From Setoptus koraiensis (lineage: Eukaryota > Animalia > Arthropoda): DNA of 64,000 nt. Made by a program: the position numbers and the translations under genes. The DNA is taken from the NCBI GenBank assembly GCA_048013815.1, contig CM106586.1:15624001-15688000 (forward strand). The letters are read 5' to 3'. Numbering within the stretch: position 1 is the stretch's first letter; every line of letters starts with the position of its first letter. The notes under the pieces are model-generated. The model ran no database searches and was not told the DNA's origin. It was given only the letters and a program-made list of their open reading frames with translations. This document shows, one piece after another, positions 9,701 through 44,603 of the stretch.

Positions 9701-9999
9701 TTGAGTTCACAGGGCAACTTGGATGAATTCTGCGAATGGTCTGGTGTGTGTCTGTGTCATTGCAATTATTATACATGAGTATTAATGAGTTTTTGCATAA
9801 CCTAAGCCAAGTGCTCGCTAGCAACCGCCGTCTGGACATGGACTAACTTGAGTTGACAGGAGTGTCTACGCCCACGGAATAAACAATGCAGAATTATGGA
9901 ATTGAGAACAATTTAAATTGATTGGAATTCTCTGTCTCTCTATCTCTTATATATACATTGTTTTTGATTTTTAATATCATGCGTTCAACAAACTAAACT

Positions 10000-10499
10000 N
10001 NNNNNNNNNNNNNNNNNNNNNNNNNNNNNNNNNNNNNNNNNNNNNNNNNNNNNNNNNNNNNNNNNNNNNNNNNNNNNNNNNNNNNNNNNNNNNNNNNNNN
10101 NNNNNNNNNNNNNNNNNNNNNNNNNNNNNNNNNNNNNNNNNNNNNNNNNNNNNNNNNNNNNNNNNNNNNNNNNNNNNNNNNNNNNNNNNNNNNNNNNNNN
10201 NNNNNNNNNNNNNNNNNNNNNNNNNNNNNNNNNNNNNNNNNNNNNNNNNNNNNNNNNNNNNNNNNNNNNNNNNNNNNNNNNNNNNNNNNNNNNNNNNNNN
10301 NNNNNNNNNNNNNNNNNNNNNNNNNNNNNNNNNNNNNNNNNNNNNNNNNNNNNNNNNNNNNNNNNNNNNNNNNNNNNNNNNNNNNNNNNNNNNNNNNNNN
10401 NNNNNNNNNNNNNNNNNNNNNNNNNNNNNNNNNNNNNNNNNNNNNNNNNNNNNNNNNNNNNNNNNNNNNNNNNNNNNNNNNNNNNNNNNNNNNNNNNNN
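10000..10499. other. Assembly gap of exactly 500 N
   Basis: The round, fixed length suggests a scaffolding placeholder, so the true distance is unknown. Confidence 0.97.
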
Positions 10500-13779: not shown

Positions 13780-15963
13780 AATATCAATATTATTATTGTA
13801 CTATTAGAATGGGCCTATGAGATAAATATACTAATAGCCGCTCACGCGTAGTTATACTTTAGCACATCAAACGTTTAGTATCTGCCTAACATCACAGCCT
13901 CTAGCCGTCTCGCTCGACGAAGCAACAGGGACACGAGCAGTAGCCACGCGTGTACTCTTAAAAACACGAGGCTCTAAAGAGCGTATTCGATTCTCCGGAA
14001 GACAAGCAGAGTCTGGCTGCTGATCGTTTATTGCACGATAGGAGCTCGATGAATCACAAAGATGATTGTGCTGCAGCTGCCTTATTAATACAAAATAATA
14101 TTAGTCCGATGTTACCTCTAAATCTGGATTCATGCACTCCACGTAGCCAGCATTATGGAACGAACGCCGTAGCTAAGCTGCTCCTTGGATATCAGGTAAT
14201 GTTAACTTTCAAGCCAAACATAATATCACTCCACTCATGTCGCAGCTAAATGGGGCAAGGAGAGGATGGTGGAACTTACTTATAGAAACGGAGCTACTAT
14301 CGAGCGACACTAAAAGATGGACTTACTCCATTGCTTGTGCAGCTCGCAGTGGTCGCAACGATGTTGTCGATATATTAATTCGTAAAGGTGCTCCAATATC
14401 CGCGGCTGAGGGTCTAGAAGATGACGTGTTTAAGCCCCTCTACACATGGCAACCAGGGAGACCATCATGAATCTGCGTCTCTCTGGCTCATCATAGGGCA
14501 TCAGTAAATGATGTAACTAACGATTATCTAACAGCTCTTCATGTGGCTAGTCATTGCGGAGCATGTTACAGTGGCAAAACTTCTCTTAGATCATAAAGCG
14601 ATCCAAACTTTAAGCTCTGATGGATTACATCGTTGATATAGCATGTAAAAGAATCGTTTAGCGGTGGTGGAACTACTATTACGTTATGGTGCTCATTAAA
14701 TTTCAGTAACCGAATCAGCATAACCCCATTACATGTTGCTGATATTATGGGTAATATCGATATAGTCACATATTATTTTAAAAAGCATGGAGTATATTGA
14801 AACATCGACTGTTAGAGGAAGAGACACCGTTGCATCTGGCAGCCAGGGCAATTCAAATTGATGTGATCAAAATATTATTGCGTCACGGTGCTAACGTTGG
14901 AGCTAAGGCAAAAGAAGCGCAAACAGCACTTCATATCGCCTCGAGACTGGGCAATGCAGAAATAGCGGATCTCATTGATTCGTCTCGGTATTCGCAGTGG
15001 ATGCTCCCACCAAGGACAGCTATACAGCACTACATATTGCTGCAAAAGAGGTCATGATGAGGTAGTTGAAGTTTTACTAGATCATGGAGCAAAACATCAC
15101 TTGTGCAACCAAGAATCACGGCTTCACACCCTTGCATCTCTGCGTCAAAGTACGGCATTGAAAGTAGTCGAACTTCTCCTGGAGACTTGGTTGCATTAAT
15201 AGACGGCAGGTAAAAAGGAGTAACTCCTTGCATGTGTCACTCATTATGGATACCTGGTTGTCGTTCGTTTTTAAGTTAGAGGCCTCTCCACCGTACACTG
15301 CGAAGAATCAGGTATACCTCTCTACACATCGCAGCCAAGGGAAACAGATTAGATGTCGCTACAGCATCTTCTTGAGTATGGTTCCAAGCCAAATGCAGAA
15401 TCTAAAGCTGGTTTTACTCCGTTACATCTCGCAGGACAGAAGGCCGTGCAGATATGGCGGCTTTGCTTATCTACAATGGGGCTAACGTGAAACGCTCGAG
15501 CCAGAAATGGTATCACCATTACATTATGTGCCCAAGAGGATCACGTGAATGTGGCAAGTTAATGTTGCAAGTCGGGTGAACAACTCAACGAACAAACAGG
15601 GGTGGTTTCATCCTCTGTCATGTTGCCTCACACTTCGGTAGAGTTAATATGATACGATTTCTATTATCTAATGGTGCTAATGTAAATATTCCAGCAGCTC
15701 TGGTTTCAACTTTGCATCAAGCATGCATGTACCAGCAAATAGTTGTCTTCTTTTGCAAGCAAAGCGCATCCAGAAGCATAACAGTAGTGGTCAAACAGCG
15801 CTCTCAATAGCTCAAAATTAGGCTACGTATCCATCGTTGGATTACCTGAGTAATCACAGAAACAGTAGTCAAAGACAACAACACTGACAATAACAGAAGA
15901 AAAATACAAGATCGTTGGCCCACGAAATATGCAAGAAACTTTCGTCAGCGACTCAGAAGAGAG
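13780..15963 (+). CDS. Ank2: Ankyrin membrane-binding domain (ANK repeats) exon, heavily frameshifted in this assembly
   Basis: Fragments in shifting frames follow the canonical ankyrin order: [131 protein letters not shown]...[11 protein letters not shown], ending at donor GTAAGT (15964). The 5' boundary is uncertain and may extend to about 13200. Confidence 0.75.
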
Positions 15964-16270
15964 GTAAGTGTTTCTTAAAACATTCTCGTTCATTCGTTGC
16001 GTATCGTTTTCAACAGATGCACACTTTATACATATATCTTGAATATCATGAATCTACGGTTAGTCGTTATCGGTCCATTCATGTGTCAGCTTCCTTGACT
16101 AGACACGAGCTGTTCAGACCCTCTGCAAAACATATTCTAGAAATCTTCCTGCGAAGGAACTAGTCACATCTCGTGTCTTAGCTGGTCCACTTAGAGAGAA
16201 CTTAGTGACATGGGAATTCGCCAAATAATTTGATGGTGGTGCCACATAACTCACTTGTCAGCCGTTGTAG

Positions 16271-16890
16271 TTCGAATATAGTGCCAAGATATCAGCTTGT
16301 TGTACCCTGAGAATCTCCTGTCTAAGGACGAAACAGCAACTGGCCAAGATAGGTTCGAACAGTTCAAATAGCGGTCACCAATCTGTCGGTATACCCGTCG
16401 GCTGTATATGTGATCCGCGAAAGATCGTTATATGTCACCAGATTTACATACATTGGGGCAAAATATCTCATTATCTTGCCTGTTGTCGTCAGGCATGCGA
16501 TCAATCTGGCTACTTTGTTAGGCCCACCATTTTTGAGACTGACAATCCCATTGATGAAGAGGGAATTTTCAGGGACAATAATAACCTGTTACTCTTTTCT
16601 TGACAACAAGCTAGACAAAATGATAGATCTTATTGCGAACGACAGTGATTGCGCTTCAACTGGTGGCATTTTTACTCAAGATGAGTTGTTTATTGAGCTT
16701 GCGATAAATTCAGAATGTCAGCTCGTAATTTCTATATTAACGATAAGTCGACTGGAGTGATTGTAAGACAACTGCCATTTGGCGGTGGCCGACTATTGTG
16801 CATTAACGACAAGCCAATTTGTTAAGATGGGCAGATTCGCAGACAGTCAAAAGTGCGAGATCGCACATGATTGATCGGCAATAATGCGGA
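16271..16890 (+). pseudogene. Degenerate 3' fragment of P5C dehydrogenase nested in an ankyrin intron
   Basis: Collinear with 53100-53751: TTCGAATATAGTG, GATCAATCTGGCTAC, ATTTTTGAGACT, CAAGATGAG, AATTTCTATATTAACGATAAG, CCATTTGGCGGTGGCCGACTA. Translation FLDNKLDKMIDLIANDSDCASTGGIFTQDELFIE versus YPDNKLDETLDLVANNSKYALTGAIFAQDESFIE. Indels present. Confidence 0.85.
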
Positions 16891-25418: not shown

Positions 25419-25743
25419 CTGAGGACACTGCACATGCAGAATCAGTCAAATTCTTAACCACTGATCATATGAGAGGCCTGGGCGAAGGTAACTCTCACAT
25501 GGATGTTCGACAAGACGAAATGAGTCAAGACATAACATTCTTGTCTCGTGATTTCACCGCTCCATTGGATGGTGGTGAATCAACAATGGGCGGCATTTAT
25601 GGCACTGCCTCGTCTAATTTGGGCAGCACAAACCAATCGCAATTAGACCAAACTACCAGAGGATATGTCTACAATGAGCAAGCCTTAAACCAGCTTTCAC
25701 CTGATAATGTTGAAATAGCCAAAGCACCTCTATTGCAAGCTGG
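25419..25743 (+). CDS. Ank2: Ankyrin exon: linker between ANK repeats and ZU5-A
   Basis: ACACAG acceptor, open frame (AEDTAHAESVKFLTTDHMRG...DNVEIAKAPLLQAG) and GG/GTAAGT donor. The phase matches the ZU5 exon (GG+G = Gly, then FLVSFMVDARGG). Confidence 0.8.
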
Positions 25744-27936: not shown

Positions 27937-28328
27937 GTTTTTGGTTAGTTTTATGGTTGACGCGCGTGGGGGTGCAATGCGCGGTTGTAGACACTCCGGA
28001 GTACGCGTCATAATACCACCAAAAACAGCACAGATGCCCATGAGAATCACATGTCGATATCTGAGAATGGACAAACTAATTCATCCACCTAGATTGAATG
28101 ATGGCGAAGCTTGCGCATCTAAAATCATGGAAGTGGGTCCAGCGGGAGCTAAATTTCTCGGACCGGTTCTCATTGAAGTGCCACATTTCGCCTCGTTGCG
28201 CGGACGCGAACGCGAAATAATTATTTTGTCTAGCGATGACGGCGAAACTTGGCGCGAGCATCCTATTGAGTCAGACGAAAAGATTGTCCAGTCAATAATT
28301 GATCAGGCCAATCAAGCCGATAGTAGAG
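27937..28328 (+). CDS. Ank2: Ankyrin exon: ZU5-A (spectrin-binding) domain
   Basis: FLVSFMVDARGGAMRGCRHSGVRVIIPP...EVGPAGAKFLGPVLIEVPHFASLRGREREI...GETWREH, bounded by AACAG and G/GTAAGT. Confidence 0.95.
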
Positions 28329-28450
28329 GTAAGTCAACTTCAACTAAAAATTGTCATCTTACTTTGAATGACTCGTGGTCAAAGAAATAAGTTCTAATGA
28401 TTTGATTACTTGTTTTTTCTTCTTTATTCGTTTTGTTTCTGTTTGTGCAG

Positions 28451-28680
28451 ATAAAATAAACGAAGAAAATAGACCAGCCGACGAATTAAGTGAATCGCAA
28501 AGAATCACGAAGATTATCACTGACGAATTCCCTCATTATTTTGCTATCATCTCAAGAGTAAGAAGAGAGGTTCATGCAGTCGGCCCCGATGGTGCCATTA
28601 TTAACTCGACTGTTGTTCCTCGTGTTCAAGCTACATTTACTGAAGGTGCTTTAACTAAAAGAATCAAAGTTGATATTCAG
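28451..28680 (+). CDS. Ank2: Ankyrin exon: end of ZU5-A and start of ZU5-B
   Basis: KIITDEFPHYFAIISRVRREVHAVGPDG...VPRVQATFTEGALTKRIKVDIQ. TGCAG acceptor and CAG/GTAAGA phase-0 donor. Confidence 0.93.
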
Positions 28681-29508
28681 GTAAGAGTCTTGTCCCGCAT
28701 AAGCTCAACAACTCGTTAACTATCTACCATTACTACTGTGTATATCATCATCTGCTGTCACAATTGTTGCTGTCATACTTAGCATTGCAATGTATATACA
28801 TGTGATATATATATTATCTGAACATTATTTGTAGTTTATTATTTTTTAAACAAACATCTATGACATCAACATCTTTCGCTATAACTGATGAATTGTCGCA
28901 AATAGTGACAATTCATCAGTACGCGCTCACATTTCCACTTAACTTATCATGATTGATAGTGTTGTTATACTATTTGCGAATCATGTTAAGATTGTATCCA
29001 CTCGCGATGACTTACTGGTGCCTCATGCATACAAAAGCATTGATTATGTTTGAGTCTAGCAGTGTCGTTTGAATCTCACGCGTTTCGTGCCCTCTCTATA
29101 CATACCCCTCTCCCCGATCCTTTCCCTAATTATCACATCCCTTGATACCACCACATAATTTTACAATTATTCTACCATGTCTACTTACTGCCAATGCTAC
29201 TACTACCAATGCTACCACTACCATAACTGCTACCATAATACTACCACTACCACAACTATGTACGTCACTATTTTTGCTTGTCACCAAACAATTGTAAATG
29301 TAATTGTAATAATCTCAAACAAAAACAACATCGAATTATCATCGTCAACGCACACACAAATCACCTTATTATATATCTTCAACACACATACAAAAAATCA
29401 CCTTTATATGCATCTTCGACACACACTGACCAAAATACATCGAAACTCATCAAAATTCACGCAATAAATTTCAAATAAATAAAATGAATCCCGCTATCCC
29501 ATCAACAG

Positions 29509-32500
29509 AAAGAAAATCAAGAAAGAAGTATAAGCCCGACAAAGGACGGCGAGATTATCATTGTGGATGAATCCCGTAATCAGCTAGGCGACGAGCCAGG
29601 CGAATTCACTGAAACAAGATCTATTCGTTCGCCAACACCCGGTGGTGGAAGCAGGCCACAGTCTGCCAATACTAAACGAAGGAGCAAATTTTTATTGTGC
29701 TTCGGAGGCCAGGGTTCAGTTGAGCTTTTGAATGATGCCAATTTAGATAGTCCTACTAAAAGCGACGCCCAATCAGTTGAGGCTCAGAACTCAATACTAG
29801 CCGATTTAGCTGACGCCAATGAACGAATAATTGTCAAGAGGCATGTATTAGGGGATATTGACGTAATAGATAACGAGACTAATGATGATAAGGGTGAACC
29901 AACTGGTTTTTCTTGTATGCAGCAAATAGTTTCAGAGGATTACTATATTGAGAAAGAGCCTCCACTTATACTTTATAGTGAGCCAAAGACTTATGGTAAA
30001 CGATTGACCAATCAATCGGCTCAAACAGATAGTAAATTGCAATTGAACAAGCAAAAGACAAACAAGAAAGACAAGAAAAACAAAAAGTCCAAGACAGTTA
30101 AATTAGCTTTAAATCAGACTGCTGCCAAACAACAACAGCATAATAAGAAGCAACGAAACAAACGATCAGCCTTGGGCGACGAGGATACAGTTGTTACGGG
30201 CGACAAGCAGCAGCAGGACGCTTCGAATGATAAATTCTTAGATCCTGAACGTATTAGTATCATTCAAGATGTGATTACTAGCGACGATCATAAGTGGCGA
30301 ACTTGCACAATACAAACAGATGGTGACAGTATTATCGTCAATCACGTTTCACTCATCGATGATGGCTATTGTTCGGAGAATGGAGATCTCACTAAGCAGG
30401 GCTCTTTTGGTATGGGAATCTTCAAATCGTCTAGCGCAAAAGCAAACAAAAAGAAACGCCAGCAGACCAACAACAAAGAGAAAACGTCCAAGAAGAGCAG
30501 CAAACCATCCAAAGAAGCTATTGCTGTTGAATGCGATGATATTGTTGCTCTCGAGAAAGAATTAGCTAAAAGGGGCGAGGATTTGAGTAGCTCGGTTAAA
30601 TTTGCCCCTAGCGTAACAGATGATCAACATCGCAAAGAGGAGGCTTCTGAAATAGATCAACCACAATCCTTGATAGATACAACCGTTGCCGAGTCGCCAT
30701 TGTCATCGAGCGAAAACTTGACTGAATCACCTCATAAGCAGATGCAACAGCAACAAGTTGATGAAAGGCCCGTGTCTGCTGATTCGAAGCAAGAGAAGTT
30801 ACGCCTGAAATTAGAGAAGCAAGAAAAATTGAAGAAAGAAAAAGAAGAGAAGCGTGCCAAGAAAGAACAAGAGAAGGCGGCGGCTGAAGCGGAGAAATTG
30901 AGGAAAAAATTGGAGAAGGAGAACAAGAAACAACAAAAAACTGCTAGTTCTTCTCCGTCACCCATCAGTCCCAGCGGCTCGCCAGAACCCACCGAGGTGG
31001 ATAGTTCTATTGCGTCTAATACCGAAAAGCAACAGAAAAAACTCGAAGCCAAACGTATAGAGGCCGAGAAGAAGCTAGCCAAGGAAGAGGCCAAAAAGAA
31101 AGCTAAAGAGGCTAAGGAGGCCAAAAAGCCTAAGACCAAAGAAGATAAAAAGTCCAAGGCTAAAGAGGAATCTGTTAGCACCAGTGTGCCTGTCGAGATT
31201 GTCACCACATTACATAGTGTGTCCGATCAAGCTGAGCAGCTGCAGCCCGTCTCTGAAATTGAAGTTAAGGTTGTCGAGGTACCAACTACCCATAATCAAA
31301 AACAAGCTGATGACATTGTGACTCTAGTCAAAGAATTACCTGCAGAGAAAGAACGAGATGTTGTTCCTTCAATTGAAGTTGTTGTTCCAACAATTGACCA
31401 CCACGAAGAGTTAGTTGTAGAATTAGATCAACCTAAATCGCTTAAGTCAGCCACTGTAGTCGAGCCGACCATTGTTGTCGAGCAGAACGCTGTTTTCGAG
31501 CCGGTCATCAAAGTCGAGTCAACCACTGTGGCCGAGCCAACTGCTGAAGCCCAGTCGCCACTACCAACGAGCGAGAACTTGACCGAGTCAACTGAGCAGG
31601 TGCAGCAATTAGTTGTTGAGAAGCCCTCGGTTGCTGATCCTAAACAAGAGAAGTTGCGCTTGAAATTGGAAAAAGAGGCAAAATCAAAGAGAGAGAAAGA
31701 GGAGAAGCGTCTTAAGAAAGAACAAGAGAAAGCGGCCGCTGTAGCAGAGAAACTGAGGAAGAAGCAAGAGAAAGAGAACAAGAAACAGGAGAAGATCAAC
31801 GCAAAGAATCAGAAGAAGCTAGAGGCTGAGCGTTTAGAGGCCGAAAAGAAGCTAGAGGCAGAACGACTTGTGGCCGAAAAGAACCAGAAAAAGCTAGATG
31901 CTGAGCGTTCAGAGGCCGAAAAGAAGCTAGAGGCTGAAAGACTTGTGGCCGAAAAGAACCAGAAAAAGCTAGATGCTGAGCGTTCAGAGGCCGAAAAGAA
32001 GCTAGAGGCTGAAAGACTCGTGGCCGAAAAGAAACTAGAGGCTGAGCGACTTAAGGCTGAAAAGAAACTCGAGGCTGAGCGACTTGTGGCTGAAAAGAAG
32101 CAGAAAAAGCTCGACGCCAAACGTTTGAAGGCCGAGAAGAAGCAGGCAAAAGAGGAGGCCAAAAAGAAGAGCAAGGAAGATAAAAAGAAGAGCAAAGATG
32201 CCAAAAAGAAGGGCAAGGATGCTAAAGAGAAGAAGCCAGAAGAGGACACCACTATCACAAGTATACCTGTCGAAATTGTCACAACCTCAACTGATGATGC
32301 ACCACCAGTACCAACTGAGCCACAAGCTGTCGCTAATATTCAAGATAAAGTAGCTGAGGTGGCAGAGCCTGTAATAGATGAGCAAAATGAGCCCATTCAC
32401 ACTTTCAGTAAGATTGAACAAACTTGCGAAGAAGTCGTTGGCGAAGATGGAATAGTTACCAAGACCACCAAAGTAACTGAGACAAAGTACACAACTCACG

Positions 32501-33531
32501 TAAACGAGAGTGTGGAAGTCAGAGAGCGCATCGTAAACTTGGGCGAAAGAGATATTGGTATAATTGTTGACGATTCGGACGAGGAAACCGGCATCAAACC
32601 ATTAGAAAATCAAGCCAACGAAGCTGTCTTGCGAGAAATCGAAGAGGAAACGGCCGAACCCGAGGTAGAATATGCTAGCGCATTTTCGCCACCCGAAAAT
32701 GGTGCTAAATTGAGCAAGAAAGAATTGAAGAAACAAATCAAACTGAATTCTAAGCTTATCAAGAAAGCAAAGAAACTCTCAAAGAAACAGTTGAAAGAAG
32801 CCAAAGTGCAGGCGAAATTGGCTGAGGCGGAAATTGAAAAGGCCGCTGAAGCAGAGCGCATCGCTCTCAAGGAGTCTAAGAAGGCTCTCAAGAAGGCCAA
32901 GGAGGCTGAAAAGAAGACAAAGAAGGCACACAAGAAAATGGACAAGATTGACAAAAAGATTGCGAAAAAGGCCAAGAAACTAGAGAAGAAACAGAAGAAG
33001 ATTGATGAAAAATTGGCTAAACAGCGCAAGAAACTAGAAAAGAAGAAGGCAAAGGTGTCGCTGAAGGTAGAAGATATTGGTGAACCTGTTCTACAAACTT
33101 CGTCAAAGTCATTCGAGGTGCCAATGAGCATTGAGACAACCTCTGCCGATCAACAGATGCCTGATATATTACCTAGCGAACAACAAGTGTCTATTGATGT
33201 TGGTCAACATGATTTTCAGGCCGACATTGAGCACAACAATTATCGAAGTGAAGCCGAGCCAATATTATTGACACTCGAAACAGCACAAAACTTGCCTCAA
33301 GGAGAACAATCAAGTACTGACGAATGGCTAGACGAACCTAAAGACAGTATTCAATTGCCCAGTTCAAACAAGGAACAAAGCATTGGCGAGACTTTGGTTT
33401 CGGAAGTGGTCAGTGTTGTGAAGAGTGCAGAAGAAGTAAAAGGTCAACTACAAAAGCAATCTTCGAAAGAATCATCTTCGAGTTCGAGTTCGAGTCAGTC
33501 TGAAGCATCTAGTATAAAAAATCGCGATTGA
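29509..33531 (+). CDS. Giant Lys/Glu-rich ORF in the ZU5-B intron; probable alternative terminal ankyrin exon (1,340 aa)
   Basis: Uninterrupted 4,023-nt ORF. In-frame stop at 29485-29487, then CAACAG acceptor (29508) in phase 0, matching the donor at 28681. No ATG until about 29917. Ends with TGA. Coding status is well supported; the link to ankyrin is inferred. Confidence 0.7.
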   Translation, partial: KENQERSISPTKDGEIIIVDESRNQLGDEPGEFTETRSIRSPTPGGGSRPQSANTKRRSKFLLCFGGQGSVELLNDANLDSPTKSDAQSVEAQNSILADLADANERIIVKRHVLGDIDVIDNETNDDKGEPTGFSCMQQIVSEDYYIEKEPPLILYSEPKTYGKRLTNQSAQTDSKLQLNKQKTNKKDKKNKKSKTVKLALNQTAAKQQQHNKKQRNKRSALGDEDTVVTGDKQQQDASNDKFLDPERISIIQDVITSDDHKWRTCTIQTDGDSIIVNHVSLIDDGYCSENGDLTKQGSFGMGIFKSSSAKANKKKRQQTNNKEKTSKKSSKPSKEAIAVECDDIVALEKELAKRGEDLSSSVKFAPSVTDDQHRKEEASEIDQPQSLIDTTVAESPLSSSENLTESPHKQMQQQQVDERPVSADSKQEKLRLKLEKQEKLKKEKEEKRAKKEQEKAAAEAEKLRKKLEKENKKQQKTASSSPSPISPSGSPEPTEVDSSIASNTEKQQKKLEAKRIEAEKKLAKEEAKKKAKEAKEAKKPKTKEDKKSKAKEESVSTSVPVEIVTTLHSVSDQAEQLQPVSEIEVKVVEVPTTHNQKQADDIVTLVKELPAEKERDVVPSIEVVVPTIDHHEELVVELDQPKSLKSATVVEPTIVVEQNAVFEPVIKVESTTVAEPTAEAQSPLPTSENLTESTEQVQQLVVEKPSVADPKQEKLRLKLEKEAKSKREKEEKRLKKEQEKAAAVAEKLRKKQEKENKKQEKINAKNQKKLEAERLEAEKKLEAERLVAEKNQKKLDAERSEAEKKLEAERLVAEKNQKKLDAERSEAEKKLEAERLVAEKKLEAERLKAEKKLEAERLVAEKKQKKLDAKRLKAEKKQAKEEAKKKSKEDKKKSKDAKKKGKDAKEKKPEEDTTITSIPVEIVTTSTDDAPPVPTEPQAVANIQDKVAEVAEPVIDEQNEPIHTFSKIEQTCEEVVGEDGIVTKTTKVTETKYTTHVNESVEVRERIVNLGERDIGIIVDDSDEETGIKPLENQANEAVLREIEEETAEPEVEYASAFSPPENGAKLSKKELKKQIKLNSKLIKKAKKLSKKQLKEAKVQAKLAEAEIEKAAEAERIALKESKKALKKAKEAEKKTKKAHKKMDKIDKKIAKKAKKLEKKQKKIDEKLAKQRKKLEKKKAKVSLKVEDIGEPVLQTSSKSFEVPMSIETTSADQQMPDILPSEQQVSIDVGQHDFQADIEHNNYRSEAEPILLTLETAQNLPQGEQSSTDEWLDEPKDSIQLPSSNKEQSIGETLVSEVVSVVKSAEEVKGQLQKQSSKESSSSSSSSQSEASSIKNRD

Positions 33532-35510
33532 GAGGTTATTTACAATAGCGGTTAACTTGTAGTGCTGATATAATCCTGGCACCACAAAATTCAATCAACT
33601 AACAACATGCAACATATTGGCCGGCTAAGTTGTGTTGAAATGTTTTTCTTTCACATCAACATAACACACATAGTATATATTCTTCAGAGGTATTTCATCT
33701 ATTGATTTGGCTCTAGTATTAAGTAAGATCTCAAATATATAATAATGAGATTGGCGATGTTATTGTTAGCTATCCCTCATGTTTCCCCATTCTCAATTGT
33801 ATTGTATTGAGATTGATACAATTTGTAGTGCAATACACATCTACATGTATGTGACAAGTGCAACAAGGAAGACAATAGATCTCATGCATTCATATATTTG
33901 ATTTTGATTGAGATTATTTCTTGAAATCTCGAATCAAATTTAAAATTTCTTTCAATTGAACAGTTGAAACCCTTTACATGGTGCAACAGCATACTACTCT
34001 ACCACTATCAGATATACAATACACATTTATAAATATACACAATACACATTTATACATAAACAAGCAACCCCCTGGATATTTATGTAATTATACGACACAC
34101 AGAACAATAAATGTTATGTAATGATTCTAATTGAATCACAAAACAATTTTATATCTATATTAATGTACACATTTCGAACAACAACAGCAACGACAACAAA
34201 AGCAGCAGCACTAATAACAACATCAACGTTATTATTATAAATTATTATTATATACCCACACAATGTAATGTATTATGTAAGACGAAATCGTCGCTTGAGT
34301 GACTAATCGATACTAATGTCGAATCGATTGGACGAGGTCAAGGTGGACGATTTCGTCAGTGTCAGCGAATCATCACTATGGTCACAGGTCGTCATCAATT
34401 CTTTTACTTTTATAATATAAAAAATTGATGAATCTATCCTTTCTAACAATGATAGCAACAAGAAAAAAAAAATGAAGGTTGTTCATTCAGCTCATCGGTC
34501 ATTTGTCTTTTTGTTCAATCAAAGAGCTATATCAGTGACCCGTTGTTTATCATGTGTGGTGATTGACCAACAAGATTATTGTCATTATTATTAATACATT
34601 TCAACTACCTGTCATCATTGATTTCATTAGCAATCTAACACCCTTACCATGTCAAGTCTTTTATTGACCGAAGTCCCAATTAGATTAATCTACAAGCTGC
34701 TATAACCAACACCAACACCAACGTAACAATGTCAATCAAAACAATTGCCCTCCTTAATCGGGTTGAGAATACCATTTACAGTAAACAAGCACGTCGATAA
34801 ATCCGTCTATGGTCTTTTTAAAATCTTCATGCAAACACACTCACACACCGAGATGCGCATACATTTTACCATACACAAAAACACAATGGAACCTTTAATG
34901 AGTTAATTAAACCCAATTGTAATCAAATCAAGATAATTGTGACTTAATAAAACTTAAAACAATTATAAACTTAATGTAATGATTGGTAGCGCGAAAGGTC
35001 AAGTGGACCATTTTTGGCATCCGGCGACGCGCTGGCTGTCAATTCCTCAATCGATAATTCCTCAGTCGATTTAGACATTATATCTAGTTGTTTTGTTGTT
35101 GATTTTTTTTTTCATTTTACATTTGTCATATCTTTGTAGCATGACACGAACAACAAAACAAACAAACAACACTCCATATGTTCCGAATATGGTCGCACAA
35201 CGTATTCGGGCCCTATCGATACTCGTTGGTCAAGCATGATCCTGTTCGAGACAACAGTTGAATCTTGACCCGGGCGCTGATAAGTGATTCTGTTATTTTT
35301 TTTCCTTCAGATAGACCTATGTCTATTTTTTTCTCGACAAGCGCGACAAGCTAGACGATATGCACAGTACGAATTCGCAGATTGAATATCTGTCAATTCA
35401 TTAGGCTCTATGATGGGCTGATTACTTAAAATAATGATCTGATAAAATTGAAGTATCCAACTGACCTTTTTGTTACATATTCCCTGTCTTTCGCTATTAT
35501 TATTATTCAG

Positions 35511-35703
35511 GCACAAGCCATACCTAATTCAGCAACTATTAAACTATTTGGCCAAAATAGAGTATCATTTAGTCCTATTGTCACTATTGAGCCGCGTCGT
35601 AGGAAGTTCCATTGCCCCATACAGATTAAGATTCCATTGCCACCAAGCGGAGGAGGGCTGAATGCCGACGGCACCGGACTGCGACTTCTTTGCAGCATCA
35701 CAG
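35511..35703 (+). CDS. Ank2: Ankyrin exon: ZU5-B
   Basis: [37 protein letters not shown]...[14 protein letters not shown] phase-0 acceptor and G/GTGAGT donor. Confidence 0.93.
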
Positions 35704-35827: not shown

Positions 35828-37255
35828 GTGGAACAAACAAGGCGCAATGGGAGGATGTGACCGGTTCGACCCCGTTAGCCATAGTGGAGGATTGTTTGTT
35901 ATTTACAACAACAGTTTCGGCCCGTTTCTGGCTGGTGGACTGCCATTCTAATCAGGCGAGCGTGGACTCGACAAAGTACGCAACGGAATTGTACGAGCAT
36001 ATCATTCGGGTGCCATATATGGCAAAATTTGTAATATTTGCCAAACGACGCGACATAAACGAGGCCAATGTTCGCGTTTTTTGTATGACGGACGACAGAG
36101 AGGACAAGACACTTGAGTCACAGGAACATTTTACCGAGGTGGCCAAATCGCGCGACGTCGAAGTGTTAGACGGTCAACCGTTATATTTGGAGTTTGCGGG
36201 CAACTTGTGGCCCACAATATTGATCAAGTCCAATTTGGCCAACACCGATCAGTTGGGCTTGCGCTTCACGCCATTCCGCGAGAATCGTCTTGCGTTTGTG
36301 GTGCGCATCCGGGACATCGGCCAGGATCCTATTGGGCGGGTGGCCTTCATGGAGGAGTCGCTGCGACAAGTGGCCCTGCTACAGCGGCAATTCGGTCAGC
36401 AGCGCTACAAGAGCAAGGCAATTTGCAATTTGAACATATTACTGCCGGGAATGTGTGTCAGTCACGACGAGATATTGGGCACCCCAAAGCGAAATTCGCA
36501 CTTGGCCATGGCAAAAATAGGCGATCTGACACTGGCGGACATAGCCAACGAACTGGACGACGCCGACGACAGTTTGACCGGGCCGCACGACGCCCACGAC
36601 ATTCTGGAATGGGTAGAGCTGGCGCCCAAATTGGGCATACCCCGCGACGAGGTAGAATTTATACAGTCTAGCTACGAGCACAACACGCTGAGCCAAAGCG
36701 CCAATAGGAACATAACGCCCGCGCTGATAATGCTGATGCACTGGTACAGGTTATCGTCGCCCATGACCCGCAACCAGGATCTGGGCCGGGCCTTGTTGTC
36801 TATTGGGCGCAACGATATTGCGCGCAAGTTGAATTTTTTCATTGAGCCGCGCAAGATAACGCGTAGCACAATGGAGTTGTTGCGCGAAATAGAGCTCATA
36901 CCCGTCAAGTCGTCGGACAATTTGTACGGGGTGCACCAGCATGCGGACGGCAGCGGAACAGCGGACGGCGGCGCCGGCGGCGGACTGGCCTATACCACGG
37001 GCAAGCTGGACCGGAATCTCAACATACGCTCGAGCAGTCGCTCCAGCGACGGCCAGCTGAGGTCGCGCACCAAGTCAGAGGGCGGCTACAAGTCGTCGTC
37101 GTCGTCGTCGGCGCACGCCACGCCCATCACTAAGCGGATCAGCAACGCCAGCCTGAATCGGGAGCCGGCAGAGCGGGGGGGCCAGCACGACACGGAGAGC
37201 ATAGCGGCCCACATGGGCCAGCCCGGGGGAATGGAGGCGCGCGTGAACACAAAAG
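35828..37255 (+). CDS. Ank2: Ankyrin exon: end of ZU5-B, UPA domain, death domain and start of the C-terminal tail
   Basis: GGTNKAQWEDVTGSTPL...FTTTVSARFWLVDC...VPYMAKFVIFAKR...VFCMTDDREDKTLESQEHFTEVAKSRDVEVL...FRENRL; death-domain-like EWVELAPKLGI...LMHW...LGRALLSIGRNDI. AACAG acceptor and G/GTGAGT donor. Confidence 0.93.
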
Positions 37256-38342
37256 GTGAGTAGTGACAGTTGCACTTGTGCATGCGTGACTTATGGTTCT
37301 TGTTGCGAGCTTGTTACGTACGTCTAACAATTATGTGCATCGGACTTGACAGACCCCCGCTAACTGACTAACTAACTCAGCAGCGCAATGTTGTTGTTGT
37401 TGCCAGTGAGTGAGAGCAGTGATTTGTTGCCGGCGTCAGCTGACGCGCTGTCAATAATAACGCGCGCGCACTTGCATAACAGTAATTGAGTGAGAGCCGC
37501 TGCTCGTGGCTGGCCGTCGATGCGCCGTTATAATCCGGTTTGCGCGCGGATTAGATGCAATGTACATAATGACAGCGGCGCCAGTACGCGTTTGTGCACG
37601 CGCTGCGCACCGGAACTCGCCCCGTTCGCTGGTGGGCGCCGATCGGAAACGGACCGGCGAGCTGGCTGGCACCGGCTCGCCGCTTGTTAGCTCGGCGCCG
37701 CCAGCCAGTAATGAGCTCGTGAGGCGACGGCCAAGCCGGCGGCGCCGGTGCCGAGGTAACTCTACACTGGCCACCGTTATACAACTAGCGAGCGTTATAT
37801 AACCAACCGTTACGTAACTGTTATATAAGTTATATAAGTTATATAAGTGAGCGTTGTGTAACTGTTATATGACTACTATGAGCAGCAACTGTATTGGCTG
37901 TGTATTGGCGGCGAGAGTGGCTCCTTTAATTGAGGTCAGCGTCGACGCTGGCGCAATTGTTGGTAGTGGCGCGTTGCGAGCGATTCTCTAATAATGGCAA
38001 CACACTCACTCAATACATACACTTGTGTACAAACACACACACACACGCACAACATAACAACGACTACTACTACTACTACCACCACTAACAATAGCGCCCA
38101 ATAGCGAGCGATGTGAAACAACTGCGAGCGAACACTAAACGCTAAACACTAAACACTAAACGCGCTAGACAACAGCCCAAAATGCTGAATAATAATGAGA
38201 CGAAGCAACAACAGTCTCGACAATATTGACTAACACCGCCGTTGCTGACACAAACTGACTTTGTCGTAGCTACCACCGAATAACAACAACAACAACTCAC
38301 AACGACAACAACTCACAACGACAACAACAACGCACGTCAAAC

Positions 38343-40742: not shown

Positions 40743-42888
40743 GTGAGTAAGCCGGCTACAATCGGCCCCAATTGCATGCCCCACACTTGAGGAGAACCTT
40801 GGAAAAATGCATGCTCGAGAATCCGCACCCAAGTGCCACTATTCGAATTGAGTCGACTATTATTGTCTCAATCGGTCCGCAAAGCGGCCCCTGTCGCCAT
40901 ATTGATATCAAGCAACTGGTATCAGTGGTCGCATGATACCGATATGGCGATCGCAGACAGCGAGAATAACAGCATCCGAGTTGAATTGGGGCGCGAGCTC
41001 GAGTGTCTCGTATTCGCTGCATTTGCATTTGCCTTTGTTCCTTTGGCTCCTTCGTGTCATTATTATTATCACTGTATCATTGTTATCATTTAGTCCGTTA
41101 GTCTAATTATCATTTTCCGTGTTTTTGACGCTCTGTTCAATGATGCCACTGGCCATAATTGACATGCCATGATGCAATTATCATTGCGTGGGCCGTGGCA
41201 CCGTTAACACTGTATTCTGATTTGTATCTATATAACAATATATACATACCACATATAAAAATAGGCCGAGAGGCCAGTCGATGATGATGTCGAGTTGATG
41301 CTGGTGACAATCGACAAAAGGATCTCTTGGCCGATGGCAGCATAATAATGATGTTATAAGAAATAAAAGCGATAATAAGAAGCGATAACACACAAACATC
41401 CGATTGAGCCGGCCGATAACAAAATAATATTTGCAAATAAATAACCAGAATAATAACAGATAATATTGTCAGATGATATTCAGATGATATGATTGTATAA
41501 CGTATTAGTTGTAGCCGTTTAGTTGTAGCTCGAAAATTGAATTGGTTAGGATTGAATTAAAATCACAATTGAGAACAATTGAGAAAAAAGAAATTAAAAA
41601 AACAAAAAATGATAAAAACTTGATGATAAGAACAATAATACCTGCATGCCACCGCCACCACAACCACCAATTATGCCTGCGCACTAGTGACACACACACA
41701 CACACACACCTGACCTGTATTACCTGTATTCGAGGAACCGCCAACACAGCAATATTACATAACTATTATTATTATTACTATTATTATACTACCACTATTA
41801 TAATTATTATCATTATTATAATCATACTTAACTATTATAATTGCCATCACTGCTATTATCACAGTATAGTTGTTAGTCGGGACTACGCAAAGTTATGATC
41901 TTTAGTTATTATTATTATTATCACTATCGCCTGCTACAACGACTCACTGTGAACAACCTAATTAACTAGTTACTTATCATAACAATCTGGCCAGACTGTT
42001 TGGCCAGATATTGTTGTTATCTGTGAGAGTTTTCGCGCCATGTGCAAGCACGAACAAACAAACAATCTATCTAGTTAGCGGCATGTGTAATACAGTTTTT
42101 TGTTGCGACAGCAAACACCTCTATCTAATACAGATTATAACTATATATAATTTAAGCTACTTAGAAACTACACTGAGAAATAAACATTGTCTACTTTAAA
42201 GCCCGCCTCTTGTTGTGTCCATTCTCTGCGCTCTGATCAACTGATTGGATGAGCCCCGTGTGGGGGCCTCATTGATACTCGCTCGTCTCGTCGCTACCAC
42301 TCAACTCGGTGCTGTGACAGGTGCCAAATTATCGGATGACTACAGTTGAGGCGCTATAATTAGAGTGGCGTCGTCAATAATTGATAATACCAACAGACAG
42401 TTCCCCAATAGACGCATCCCCAATTGACAGCAACTAACAATATCCAGCACGGGACTAACTCTCTCTCTCACTCTTTCTCTCTATTTGAACGCAATTCTTT
42501 TCCGTTTGTCATCGTGTTGAATGTCGACCAAAATAAACGGCGCTTCGACCAAAACCAACGGCGTTCCGACAAAAATAAACGGCTTTGCGACAAAAACACG
42601 AAATGTCACTCGCAAACAAACTAACAAACTACGAATCGACGGACTGTCGCTATATACGCTGGTCACTCGCTCCAAATATATCCATTGCTGCTCACTATAC
42701 GCTTGGCTAAACGTCTGTCTGTGTGTTAAAATGGCGCCGTCATCATCATCATCATGTATCACGTTCGCTTGTTGTTTCATGACACGGCATGATTATAACA
42801 AAACGTCGCGTTGAAACACGCGTTAAAACACGTTTCGCGTTACATAACTATACACTACTGCAAAATGCATCCATATAACGACCGCCAG

Positions 42889-44115
42889 ATCTCATTGATA
42901 AGCTAGACGAGATAGTTGAGTTAGGTAACGACAGTGATAGCTTGAGTGGTGCCAATAAGGTGAGCCGCTCGCCCGAACAAAGTGATACTATTGACGCCAG
43001 GCAAAAGTCTACAATTGACGCCAGACGAAAGTCTACAATTGACAGTCAGCAAACAACAAATATCTGTGCTGCCGGCGGCGGCGAGCTGTCGCGTAATTGC
43101 ATTGATATCGATATGTTGCAAGTGGCCTCAAATGAAGAATTATCTATTTGTGCGTCCAGTGAGAATATGTTGGAGGCGGCGCCACTGTCTACCACTGCCA
43201 GCAGTGTTTGTGAGGACCTTGAACGTGACCGGCCGCGCCATCCAACGGGCAACTACTTGGCCAGCAGCACCGACAACAACTGCGCTTCTGGCCGTGACCT
43301 AGATTCGCCGCGCACACTGACAACAGCAGCAACAGCAACAACAACAACAACAACAATGACGACAACAACGCAAGCAACAACAACGCAAGCAACAACAACG
43401 CAAGCAACAACAACACAAGCGGTGCCAGACGGGGCCCCAGTTGCGACAGCAACATCAGCAGTGGCAGCGGCACCAAAAACAGCCACACCGACACCGTCAG
43501 AAGTGGATAGTCTGGCCGAGTCGCTGGTGGCCGAGTCGCTGGTGGTGGGCGTAGGTTGTGCCGTTGTTGCGGCACAGATTGTTGAAGATGAACTCAATTC
43601 GGATATAGCTGGCAGACAGTCGGCGCAGACGACACAAAACGACGGGCCCCAGTCTGCTCAGTGTAGCCAGCGCGGCCCCAAGAAACAAGCCGGCCAATTG
43701 GCAGCAGCAGCAGCAGGTGACGCGCCGCCGCTGGTAAAAGGGCGCCAGTGGAGCGAGCGCATCTCGAATGACCTTGATACTGCCAATAATAAGCTAGAGT
43801 TACATAACAATTCAGACAACGATGAGCGCAATTCTGACGACGACCAGCACGAGCAGCCTTTAAATGGCGCTGACCTAGATTCGTTGAATGGTAATGGTGC
43901 CAGCGCCGAGGTTGGCGCTGCTGCAGTGGCATGCGCATTAACCGCCAACCAAAAAGCAAGGTCACACGGCCCAATTGGCGGCATGGGCCCCATTGGGCCC
44001 AGCGTGTCACAGCGCACGCTCAGCAGCCAGCGGGGGCCCCAAAAGGAGAGCGAGCTAGTTGTTGAGTCAGCTTGCCAAATGCGGGCCAGCGCGTCGCCAG
44101 TTGTTGTGCAGTCTG
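42889..44115 (+). CDS. Ank2: Ankyrin C-terminal tail exon, 1,227 nt, phase 1-1, T/A/S-rich
   Basis: CGCCAG acceptor (an alternative TTAG at 42924 is in the same phase) extends track ORF 42942-44123 upstream. TCTG/GTAAGT donor. Confidence 0.7.
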
Positions 44116-44603
44116 GTAAGTAGAACGATGACCCTGAGGCGCGCGCGTTGCGAGCGCGTTGTCGCTAGGCGCTTCTTGAAGCTTCTCGACGCGGGCAATT
44201 CTTTCGTTGTGTAGCCTTTCGTTGTGTAGCCTGGCGCTCATTAGTTTGTTTGCACCGTTACCCTCGCCACGTTATTTTGCCGTTATTCTTTGCCAGTCTC
44301 GCCATTCGCTGTTCGCCATTTGAACACGATTTGCGATTTGCATTATTTGTTGTGTGCCGAGTGTGAATGTTTGAGTGCGCGATATGCATGCAATACGATG
44401 GGCGCACCCCATTAAAATTCGAGCGAAGCCAACGTTAAAATTGAGCAGCCAACGTTGAAATTGAGCGGCCAACGTTAAGTTCGAGCAGCCGACGTAGACA
44501 ACGAGGGCGCCCGCTATCAAAAGAGCCATTCTCTCATTATTATCGTTTCATTTGTTGTTCATTTCATGTCAACCACAACCACAACCGACCGCCACCGCGA
44601 CAG

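What the first reader, a model, noticed from the sequence alone, without database searches (positions are those of the whole stretch)
29509..33531. A 4-kb giant exon positioned inside ZU5-B: candidate new giant-ankyrin architecture
The ORF sits in the intron between ...KRIKVDIQ and AQAIP..., which splits ZU5-B. It has a phase-0 CAACAG acceptor 21 nt after an in-frame stop, matching the phase-0 donor at 28681, and no ATG for its first about 135 codons, so it behaves like an exon rather than a nested gene. It ends in a stop. The product would keep the ANK repeats and ZU5-A, the domain established as sufficient for beta-spectrin binding, but lose ZU5-B, UPA and the death domain. They would be replaced by a 1,340-aa K/E-rich, largely coiled-coil or single-alpha-helix-like tail. 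The giant exons I know lie between UPA and DD (vertebrate AnkB/G) or further C-terminal (Drosophila Ank2-L/XL, C. elegans UNC-44), not within ZU5-B. The KKE-type repeats recall the MAP1B microtubule-binding region (inference).
Basis: partly seen in the sequence, partly recalled or inferred. Interest (0 to 1): 0.8.

Follow-up and report, generated by a model that had tools for sequence, protein, structure and literature searches.

The report
Mite-specific long end-exon inside ankyrin's ZU5
A 4-kb protein-coding stretch inside an intron of a gall mite's ankyrin gene looks like a real alternative last exon, kept by selection in at least a dozen mite genomes. It would replace the back half of ankyrin with a long charged tail, a position not described for giant ankyrins, but no RNA evidence could be obtained.

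Summary
An open frame of 1,340 codons (29509-33531, +) lies in the intron that splits the second ZU5 domain of an ankyrin gene. It has a phase-0 CAG acceptor, matches the phase-0 donor at 28680/28681, and has no ATG for 136 codons.

Eleven further genomic loci from other mites, plus GenBank's Fragariocoptes setiger model, show the same layout: ZU5 exon ending GLQ|GTAAG, a short intron, a homologous tail frame with its own stop, then ZU5C-UPA-death domain. The evidence favours a spliced terminal exon over a nested gene:
- Seven of nine species have no ATG before the first conserved motif.
- The predicted acceptor is always the first AG after a long AG-free zone, 444 nt here, the longest in the window.
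- In a close species pair, DNA conservation resumes exactly at the acceptor.
- dN/dS is 0.17.

The tail family has 15 members among 1.84 billion proteins and no Pfam match.

- The ANK-repeat region upstream (14108-15964) is a decayed relic, so this product would not keep the ANK repeats.
- There are no MAP1B-type KKEE motifs.
- Only part of the tail is helical.

RNA runs gave zero reads, which is no test. I rate it a new variant of a known kind, of moderate interest.

The parts
14108..15964 (+). Relic of the ankyrin-repeat (membrane-binding) domain. It is collinear with repeats about 6-24 of canonical ankyrins but decayed.
   Evidence: tblastn gives 28-30% identity with 133 gaps. Each frame has 24-31 stops and the longest open stretch is 105 codons. 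Pfam Ank hits fall only on fragments in different frames.
25469..25743 (+). First intact conserved coding exon (linker before ZU5-A). It starts at an ATG and ends GG|GTAAGT.
   Evidence: Sequence read. The N-terminus is the same as in the GenBank Fragariocoptes model P0002. tblastn support is.
27937..28328 (+). ZU5-A (ZU5N) exon.
   Evidence: Pfam ZU5 6e-29. It is 74% identical to spider ankyrin. A 240-nt AG-free zone ends at its acceptor. Boundaries were read.
28451..28680 (+). Exon with the end of the ZU5-A module and the first 34-39 residues of ZU5-B. It has a phase-0 donor (CAG|GTAAGA) shared by both splice choices.
   Evidence: The same GALTKRIK.GLQ|GTAAG donor occurs in all 10 loci that reach it.
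28681..29508 (+). Intron upstream of the long exon. Positions 29063-29506 form a 444-nt AG-free zone that ends exactly at the CAG acceptor.
   Evidence: It is the longest real AG-free run on the + strand of the 64-kb window, where AG occurs every 17 nt on average. Eight other species show 52-167 nt zones at their predicted acceptors.
29509..33531 (+). Long alternative terminal exon, coding part: 1,340 codons plus TGA.
29626..30438 (+). Conserved, mostly disordered N-terminal region of the tail. Its invariant motifs are KRRSxFLxCFG, DYYIExEPPLIL..EPKTYGKRL, the KWRTCTIQTD hairpin and DDGYxSxxGDL.
   Evidence: Alignment A2 has 36 invariant columns. AlphaFold2 gives pLDDT 48 with one beta hairpin. 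dN/dS in this region is 0.06 for L002 against L011.
30694..30933 (+). First copy of an internally duplicated module (SPL..SENLTES..KQEKLRLKLEK.. K/E helix).
   Evidence: Read from the translation.
31555..31788 (+). Second copy of the same module.
   Evidence: Read from the translation.
31803..32143 (+). Lineage-specific tandem repeat with a 75-nt period and 4.7 copies. It encodes KKLEAERL(V/E)AEK(N/K)Q units.
   Evidence: Tandem Repeats Finder, score 428.
32371..33108 (+). Conserved C-terminal region: a beta hairpin (EEVVGEDG..TKTTK..ETKY), then one strongly basic helix of about 120 residues (32716-33075, with invariant HKKMDK.DKK), then KxEDIGEPVL.
   Evidence: Alignment A3. AlphaFold2 gives helix pLDDT 94-98 and hairpin pLDDT about 78.
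33532..34111 (+). Putative 3' untranslated region, with the only AATAAA within 1.2 kb of the stop at 34106-34111.
   Evidence: This is inference; no poly(A) site was observed.
35511..35703 (+). Canonical next exon (middle of ZU5-B), the alternative partner of the 28680 donor.
35828..37263 (+). Exon with the end of ZU5-B, UPA and the death domain in one open frame.
   Evidence: Pfam UPA_2 4e-43 and Death 1e-6. tblastn support is.

Best explanation
29509-33531 is an alternative 3'-terminal long exon of the ankyrin gene.

Splice choice. The phase-0 donor after ...KRIKVDIQ (28680) can join either the canonical acceptor at 35511 or the acceptor at 29509.
- The canonical choice gives ZU5C-UPA-death domain, plus post-death-domain tails.
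- The alternative choice makes the transcript end after the stop at 33529-33531, probably with polyadenylation near 34.1 kb. This last step is inferred.

Product. The ANK-repeat region is decayed and the first intact ATG is at 25469. So the product would be about 1,639 aa, made of a linker, ZU5N, a 34-39 residue stub of ZU5C and a 1,340-aa tail.

Tail. The tail belongs to a mite-restricted family under purifying selection. It combines disordered stretches with invariant short motifs, K/E-rich helices, acidic V/E/P/T spacers, a conserved beta hairpin and one 120-residue strongly basic helix.

Inferred function. It would be a cytoskeletal linker. ZU5N docks on beta-spectrin, more weakly than the full ZU5-ZU5-UPA unit. 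The basic helices and motifs engage an acidic partner such as microtubules or membranes, as the unrelated tails of Drosophila Ank2-L/XL and vertebrate giant ankyrin-B do.

What is shown: the frame, its conservation, its position and the splice-site signatures. What is inferred: actual splicing, the poly(A) site, the start codon and the function.
For: 1. Synteny. Eleven further genomic loci show ZU5 exon, GLQ|GTAAG phase-0 donor, 38-300 nt, a tail frame of 1,600-2,065 codons with its own stop, 640-1,400 nt, then the AQ..[14 protein letters not shown]..UPA..DD exon (L001-L011).
2. An independent gene predictor made the same join in Fragariocoptes setiger (KAG9510269.1 = P0002..KRIKVGLQ|SKRLKR..).
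3. No in-frame ATG lies upstream of the first conserved motif in 7 of 9 distinct species. The frame opens 0-27 nt before a phase-0 AG in most. In L007 and L008 the closing TAG is itself the acceptor AG.
4. The gap between donor and frame is too small for a promoter plus a first exon: 139-246 nt in L009 and L001.
5. AG-exclusion zones. The predicted acceptor is the first AG after 444 nt here and after 52-167 nt elsewhere, against an expected AG every 21-49 nt. The confirmed acceptors at 27937 and 35828 show the same signature.
6. In L002 against L011, DNA identity is high to the donor, collapses in the intron and resumes exactly at CAG|GG.AAAGACAAG.
7. Selection. dN/dS is 0.17 overall and 0.06 at the N-terminus, and many columns are invariant across 13 sequences.
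8. Terminal nature. Every tail has its own stop. An EEIDVV..LP block lies 15-30 residues before the stop, and five tails end in ..AD.
9. The composition (S, E, T, D, K and P together 54%) matches the signature reported for ankyrin long exons (PMC5135030).
Against: - There is no transcript evidence at all. Four RNA runs gave zero reads even on the constitutive ZU5 exon, so they were no test.
- All homologous contigs found are genomic, none is cDNA.
- No fused full-length isoform other than P0002 was found among annotated proteins of 1,262-4,016 aa.
- In the L002/L011 pair an in-frame ATGAAC lies 15-27 nt upstream of the acceptor, and a conserved 30-nt island lies about 130 nt upstream. That could mean an internal start or promoter in that lineage.
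- The decayed ANK region leaves the real 5' end of the transcript unknown.
- Losing UPA should weaken spectrin binding.
- The only AATAAA is 575 nt after the stop.
Confidence: 0.72

Rival explanations
1. It is a nested, independently transcribed gene in the ankyrin intron. It would have its own promoter and start, and would encode a tail-only protein unrelated to ankyrin function.
For: - Gene callers list it as a separate frame in all Logan, ENA and JGI contigs.
- L002 and L011 have an in-frame ATG just upstream, and L003 has one inside the frame before the first motif.
- A conserved intronic island sits about 130 nt upstream in L002/L011.
- No fused transcript was found.
Against: - Seven of nine species, including this window, have no ATG before the conserved KRRSxFLxCFG motif.
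- The donor-to-frame gap is as short as 139-246 nt.
- Conservation begins exactly at a phase-0 AG that ends a long AG-free zone.
- The phase always matches the ankyrin donor.
- The position has been fixed across genomes whose synonymous sites are saturated.
Confidence: 0.1
2. It is a spliced exon, but it is joined to another 5' exon or an internal transcription start elsewhere in the locus, not to the 28680 donor. ZU5-A would then be absent from the product.
For: The ANK relic shows that the 5' part of the locus has been remodelled. The true start of transcription is unknown. No junction was observed.
Against: - In every species the nearest upstream donor is the ZU5 one, and it is in the right phase.
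- In most relatives ZU5-A and the ZU5-B start form one exon directly upstream, so skipping it would need a more distant donor of matching phase.
- GenBank's predictor chose the ZU5 donor.
Confidence: 0.1
3. It is an internal cassette exon. A donor near the 3' end of the frame, for example GAA|GTAAAA at 33435/33436 in phase 0, would join 35511 and insert about 1,300 residues into ZU5-B.
For: A phase-0 GTAAAA exists at 33436 and is phase-compatible with 35511.
Against: - That donor is weak (A at -1, A at +5) and is not conserved in other species.
- Coding conservation (EEIDVV..LP and the ..AD ends) continues to the stop in relatives.
- An insertion would break the ZU5C fold.
Confidence: 0.04
4. 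It is a chance or decaying open frame with no function, for example a low-complexity K/E repeat.
For: There is no Pfam match. The frame has repeats and the atlas search gave nothing.
Against: - The frame stays intact for 1,340-2,065 codons in at least 11 genomes.
- dN/dS is 0.17.
- Non-repetitive motifs are invariant.
- GC is 9-20 points above both flanks.
Confidence: 0.02

Closest known systems
Giant-ankyrin long exons: vertebrate 480-kDa ankyrin-G and 440-kDa ankyrin-B, Drosophila Ank2-L/XL, C. elegans UNC-44 long form (Jegla et al. 2016, PMC5135030)
   Same: It is an unusually long single exon inside an ankyrin gene and is optional by splice choice. It encodes a mostly disordered, charged polypeptide with a similar amino-acid bias (S, E, T, D, K and P together 54%). 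Like the Drosophila tails, it ends the protein. The same gene also keeps long frames after the death domain, the canonical protostome position.
   Different: The position is inside ZU5C, not before or after the death domain, so ZU5C, UPA and the death domain are lost. There is no detectable homology to long isoforms of spiders, horseshoe crab, centipede or dust mite. K is the commonest residue. In this genome the ANK repeats are decayed. Expression and neuronal role were not tested.
GenBank KAG9510269.1, 'Ankyrin-2, partial' of Fragariocoptes setiger (automatic annotation)
   Same: It has the same architecture: a start at the linker before ZU5-A, ZU5-A..KRIKVGLQ joined to a homologous tail, and the same conserved motifs.
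   Different: The tail is 1,980 aa against 1,340 aa and is only about 29-44% identical. It is a prediction, and I found no paper describing it. This window's tail lacks several blocks conserved in the others.
Ankyrin isoforms without ANK repeats (mouse Ank3 forms lacking the repeat domain, PMC2199924; lysosomal forms, PMC2132472)
   Same: The protein begins near the spectrin-binding domain and lacks the membrane-binding repeats.
   Different: In mouse this comes from alternative transcripts of a gene with intact repeats. Here the repeat-coding DNA itself is decayed. The mouse forms keep ZU5-ZU5-UPA and the death domain.
ER/K-type single alpha helices and basic microtubule-binding helices or repeats (MAP1B KKEE repeats, MAP7-like helix). 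This is a resemblance only, drawn from general knowledge.
   Same: The tail has long K/E-rich helices with many i/i+4 opposite charges. It also has one 120-residue helix with a net charge of about +28 and no regular heptad core.
   Different: There are no KKE[EIV] motifs, no Pfam or structural match and no binding data.

Membership tests
Canonical ankyrin gene (ANK repeats, ZU5-ZU5-UPA, death domain) | 24 ANK repeats encoded intact | tested here: not met
   Region 14108-15964 has 24-31 stops per frame plus frameshifts, and is 28-30% identical to canonical repeats.
Canonical ankyrin gene (ANK repeats, ZU5-ZU5-UPA, death domain) | ZU5-ZU5-UPA cassette and death domain | tested here: met
   Pfam ZU5 6e-29, UPA_2 4e-43 and Death 1e-6. 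The exons are 47-74% identical to spider ankyrin.
Giant-ankyrin long exon (sense of Jegla et al. 2016) | Unusually long single exon within an ankyrin locus | tested here: met
   The frame is 4,023 nt here and 4.8-6.2 kb in relatives, always between ankyrin exons.
Giant-ankyrin long exon (sense of Jegla et al. 2016) | Position immediately before or after the death domain | tested here: not met
   It lies in the intron 34 residues into ZU5C. The paper describes only the two positions around the death domain.
Giant-ankyrin long exon (sense of Jegla et al. 2016) | Composition bias: S plus E about 25%, and S, E, T, D, K and P together over 55% | tested here: met
   S plus E is 22.5% and the six residues total 54.0%, borderline but similar.
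Giant-ankyrin long exon (sense of Jegla et al. 2016) | Included in mRNA together with the ankyrin core, giving a giant isoform | not testable with these tools
   The RNA runs gave zero reads anywhere on the stretch. Only comparative splice-site evidence is available.
Alternative last exon | Phase-compatible acceptor sharing a donor with the constitutive downstream exon | tested here: met
   The donor at 28680 is phase 0, and the acceptors at 29509 and 35511 are both phase 0. The same holds in 9 species.
Alternative last exon | Own stop codon and poly(A) site | tested here: inconclusive
   A stop is present in all species and the C-termini are conserved. AATAAA lies 575 nt downstream here, but no poly(A) site was observed.
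MAP1B-type microtubule-binding KKEE repeats | Multiple KKEE or KKE(I/V) motifs | tested here: not met
   There are 0 motifs in 1,340 residues, against a shuffle mean of 1.2. Pfam finds nothing.

The most novel reading that the evidence does not exclude
A clade of mites evolved a third, independent kind of long ankyrin exon that cuts the protein inside ZU5C. This gall mite has in addition let the ANK repeats decay. The locus would then encode not a membrane-to-spectrin adaptor but a ZU5N-anchored spectrin-to-(microtubule or other) linker with a lineage-specific 1,300-2,000 aa tail. The tail may be a captured, formerly independent gene.
Probability: 0.35. Interest if true: 0.7.

Novelty: new variant of a known kind. 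Interest (0 to 1): 0.55.

Why it matters
Only two positions are described for long ankyrin exons, both beside the death domain. They have been used to argue for a single bilaterian origin with one positional switch.

A conserved, selected long exon at a third position shows that ankyrin genes can gain long tails repeatedly and at other sites. This one removes ZU5C, UPA and the death domain.

It also offers a natural experiment on what ZU5N can do without the rest of the spectrin-binding unit. In this gall mite it further tests what the protein does without ANK repeats.

The tail is a new, sharply delimited protein family with clear invariant motifs that can be tested for binding partners.

Tried and rejected
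- RNA evidence. One run search and one read-laying run were made on 28440-34439 (6,000 letters) with four poly(A) or oligo-dT runs. They gave zero reads everywhere, including the constitutive exon. The runs probably do not contain the mite, so this was no test.
- Search for cDNA-derived contigs. All 14 fetched loci are genomic. The metagenome scan found only three contigs of one species already in hand.
- Search for annotated fused isoforms of 1,262-4,016 aa. Only P0002 was found.
- Pfam on the tail: nothing.
- ESM Atlas feature search: no usable hit.
- Foldseek against PDB with the C-terminal model: no match at E 0.001 or better. Matches to a lone helix are meaningless.
- Homology to long isoforms of other arthropods: none.
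- MAP1B-like motif idea: rejected.
- Cassette-exon idea through the GTAAAA at 33436: judged unlikely.
- Identifying the window with the published 34.5-Mb 'unidentified eriophyoid' assembly: rejected. Earlier notes place this window at least 14.5 Mb from one end and 6.6 Mb from the other end of its piece, longer than that assembly's 17.4-Mb chromosomes.
- The species of the Logan and ENA contigs could not be named.
Exons were handled one by one by reference. The only joined sequence used was GenBank's own model P0002.


Full report
**Observation**

The window holds an uninterrupted + strand frame from 29488 to a TGA at 33529-33531.
- A CAACAG acceptor places the first exon base at 29509, in phase 0, 21 nt after the in-frame TGA at 29485-29487.
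- The first in-frame ATG is at 29917, codon 137.
- The upstream ankyrin exon (28451-28680) ends ...GALTKRIKVDIQ followed by GTAAGA, also phase 0.
- The next ankyrin exon starts at 35511 (AQAIP...) after TTATTCAG.

Pfam finds ZU5 in 27937-28328 (6e-29), a weak mid-ZU5 match in 35511-35702, and UPA (4e-43) plus Death (1e-6) in 35830-37260. It finds nothing in the long frame. In a spider ankyrin the second ZU5 match covers residues 22-97 of the segment 1100-1300, and the GLQ|AQ junction falls after residue 56. So the intron does split ZU5-B about 34 residues in.

**Is the frame a real coding sequence?**

A word-index search found 12 relatives. A profile of the N-terminal 271 residues, scored against 1.84 billion representatives, found 15 proteins. 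All had E below 1e-40 and there were no weak hits. The family is real and sharply delimited.
- Thirteen sequences align with many invariant columns in non-repetitive blocks. These include KRRSxFLxCFG, DYYIExEPPLIL..EPKTYGKRL, KWRTCTIQTD, DDGYxSxxGDL, EEVVGEDG..TKTTK..ETKY, HKKMDK.DKK, KxEDIGEPVL and EEIDVV..LP.
- For the closest pair with DNA (L002 and L011), dN/dS is 0.17 overall and 0.06 at the N-terminus, with dS about 1.2.
- GC of the frame is 9-20 points above both flanks in every locus.

**Exon or nested gene?**

I fetched the DNA of eleven further loci (L001-L011) from Logan and ENA assemblies. Three metagenome contigs (L012-L014) turned out to be one species already in hand.

All loci are genomic and have the same order: ZU5 exon ending GALTKRIKIGLQ|GTAAG (phase 0), 38-300 nt, the tail frame (1,600-2,065 codons with its own stop), 640-1,400 nt, then an exon starting AQ.. 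with [14 protein letters not shown], UPA and the death domain.

Four lines of sequence evidence favour a spliced exon.
1. In 7 of 9 distinct species, including the window, no in-frame ATG precedes the first conserved motif. The frame opens 0-27 nt before a phase-0 AG in most. In L007 and L008 the TAG that closes the upstream frame is itself the acceptor AG.
2. The predicted acceptor is always the first AG after a long AG-free zone: 444 nt in the window and 52-167 nt elsewhere, where composition predicts an AG every 21-49 nt. The window's run (29063-29506) is the longest real AG-free run on the + strand of all 64 kb. The accepted acceptors at 27937 and 35828 have runs of 240 and 117 nt. Long AG-exclusion zones with distant branch points are a known mark of regulated 3' splice sites (general knowledge).
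3. In the L002/L011 DNA alignment, identity is high through the donor and 13 nt beyond. It collapses in the intron and resumes exactly at CAG|GG.AAAGACAAG.
4. The gap between donor and acceptor is only 192-245 nt in L009 and L001, which leaves little room for a promoter, a first exon and an intron.

In addition, GenBank's automatic model for Fragariocoptes setiger (KAG9510269.1, P0002) makes the same join..KRIKVGLQ|SKRLKR...

**Terminal or cassette?**

Every tail has its own stop. The EEIDVV..LP block lies 15-30 residues before the stop, and five tails end ..AD. So the stop is the real C-terminus. The phase-0 GTAAAA at 33436 is weak and not conserved. The only AATAAA within 1.2 kb is at 34106-34111. 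The poly(A) site is inferred, not observed.

**What I could not show**

No transcript evidence exists.
- The run search listed only DNA-like holders plus RNA runs that share a species label.
- Four of those RNA runs gave zero reads on all 6,000 bases, including the constitutive ZU5 exon, so they are no test.
- No fused isoform of 1,262-4,016 aa other than P0002 exists among annotated proteins.
- In the L002/L011 pair an in-frame ATGAAC lies just upstream of the acceptor, and a conserved 30-nt intronic island lies about 130 nt upstream. An internal start in that lineage cannot be excluded.

**Correction: the ANK repeats**

tblastn with dust-mite and spider ankyrins finds the ZU5, UPA and death-domain exons at 47-74% identity. 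It finds the ANK-repeat domain only at 14108-15964, at 28-30% identity with 133 gaps.
- That region is collinear with repeats about 6-24 but has 24-31 stops in each frame.
- The stops fall at positions homologous to coding residues, and there are at least three frameshifts without missing residues.
- Canonical TPLH motifs are lost.
- Pfam sees Ank only in fragments lying in different frames.
- The long frames elsewhere in the window are intact, so this is decay and not assembly error.

The first intact conserved coding is the exon 25469-25743. It starts at an ATG and has the same N-terminus as P0002. Counting from that ATG, the tail isoform would have 299 + 1,340 = 1,639 residues. Whether a second ankyrin gene with intact repeats exists elsewhere in this genome was not tested. 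Earlier notes of this scan list none.

**The tail**

- Composition: K 16.2%, E 13.6%, S 8.9%. S plus E is 22.5%, and S, E, T, D, K and P together are 54%. Net charge is +2. This is close to the bias reported for ankyrin long exons.
- N-terminal 310 residues: predicted disordered (pLDDT 48) with one hairpin at RTCTIQTD..VNHV.
- Middle: basic K/E helices alternate with acidic V/E/P/T-rich spacers. There is an internal duplication (residues 396-475 and 683-760) and a 75-nt tandem repeat encoding KKLEAERLxAEK units.
- Residues 955-1200: a confident beta hairpin followed by a single helix of about 120 residues (pLDDT 94-98). The helix has a net charge of about +28 and no regular heptad core.
- There are no KKE[EIV] motifs, so the MAP1B comparison fails at motif level.
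- Foldseek and the atlas give nothing.
- Profiles of the conserved regions do not hit 112 canonical ankyrins, including 3,000-3,800 aa isoforms of spiders and a horseshoe crab. All of those read straight through GLQ-AQP.

**Most likely mechanism**

This is an alternative last exon. It is chosen by competition between two acceptors for one donor, and probably between polyadenylation after the long exon and splicing to 35511.

ZU5N is the domain that contacts beta-spectrin. UPA also contacts spectrin, and the coupled ZU5-ZU5-UPA unit is needed for high affinity (bioRxiv 10.1101/2020.03.04.976142). The tail isoform would therefore bind spectrin weakly or need help from the tail.

By analogy with Drosophila Ank2-L/XL and vertebrate giant ankyrin-B, whose unrelated tails organise microtubules (PMC6703079; PMC7401806, abstract), I infer that the basic helices bind an acidic polymer or membrane. 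This step is inference only.

**Comparison with what is known**

Jegla et al. 2016 describe long ankyrin exons only before the death domain (chordates) or after it (protostomes, echinoderms). They sampled no mites. This window also has long frames after the death domain (38.6-49.8 kb; scan note s1-325953). So the intra-ZU5 exon is an addition, not a moved copy.

It meets the 'long exon in an ankyrin locus' and composition criteria. It fails the position criterion, and inclusion in mRNA is untested. I therefore rate it a new variant of a known kind.

Earlier scan notes call this genome a gall mite. The only named relative is an eriophyoid, and one homologous contig comes from a 'plant metagenome'. 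The breadth of the family within mites is unknown.

**Verdict**

- The reading as an ankyrin exon at a new position is well supported by comparative sequence evidence, but not by RNA.
- The claims about retained ANK repeats and MAP1B-like repeats are wrong for this genome.
- Confidence in the alternative-terminal-exon reading is 0.72, and interest is 0.55.

Noticed in passing
window 14108-15964 (+): The ANK-repeat domain of this ankyrin locus is a decayed relic, with 24-31 stops per frame, frameshifts and 28-30% identity. ZU5, UPA and the death domain stay intact. The locus seems to have lost its membrane-binding domain.
   Followed up: yes
window 42448-42886 (+): The second-longest AG-free run of the window (439 nt) ends 56 nt before the frame 42942-44123 in the post-death-domain tail region. 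It probably marks another real acceptor with a distant branch point.
   Followed up: no
L002:3810-3850 and L011 (intron between ZU5 donor and tail acceptor): A conserved island of about 30 nt (AAACTTAC.AAGAACATCA.AATTCGCCAA) sits in an otherwise unalignable intron, about 130 nt upstream of the acceptor. Both species also carry an in-frame ATGAAC 15-27 nt before the acceptor. It could be a splicing regulator or an internal start.
   Followed up: partly
L001, L005, L006, L007, L009, L010 introns: A T-rich stretch followed by CTAAC/CTAAT (branch-point-like) lies 38-86 nt upstream of the predicted acceptors. No AG occurs between it and the acceptor.
   Followed up: partly
window 29509-33531 against relatives: This window's tail is the shortest (1,340 aa against 1,600-2,065). 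It lacks blocks conserved in the others (SSFFxRLF, IVSEMYPSDPDD..ILEVNVP, DDQATLVNxSQM). It has gained an internal duplication and a 75-nt tandem repeat.
   Followed up: partly
window 53798-55318 (-) and 55939-56799 (-): Two neighbouring reverse-strand frames (506 and 286 aa) share nearly identical C-terminal halves. This looks like a recent tandem duplication, one copy shorter.
   Followed up: no
window 16410-16760 (+) and 51934-53751 (+): A short frame inside the ankyrin locus resembles the C-terminal part of the intact 605-aa aldehyde-dehydrogenase-like (P5C dehydrogenase-like) gene 35 kb downstream.
   Followed up: no
window 9907-10507: A run of N (assembly gap or masked stretch) lies upstream of the ANK relic. 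ANK repeats 1-5 could be hidden there.
   Followed up: no
runs X7, X10, X11, X12: RNA runs that share the species label of three DNA holders carry no read of this locus at all. The label may be that of a host or mixed sample and not the mite.
   Followed up: no
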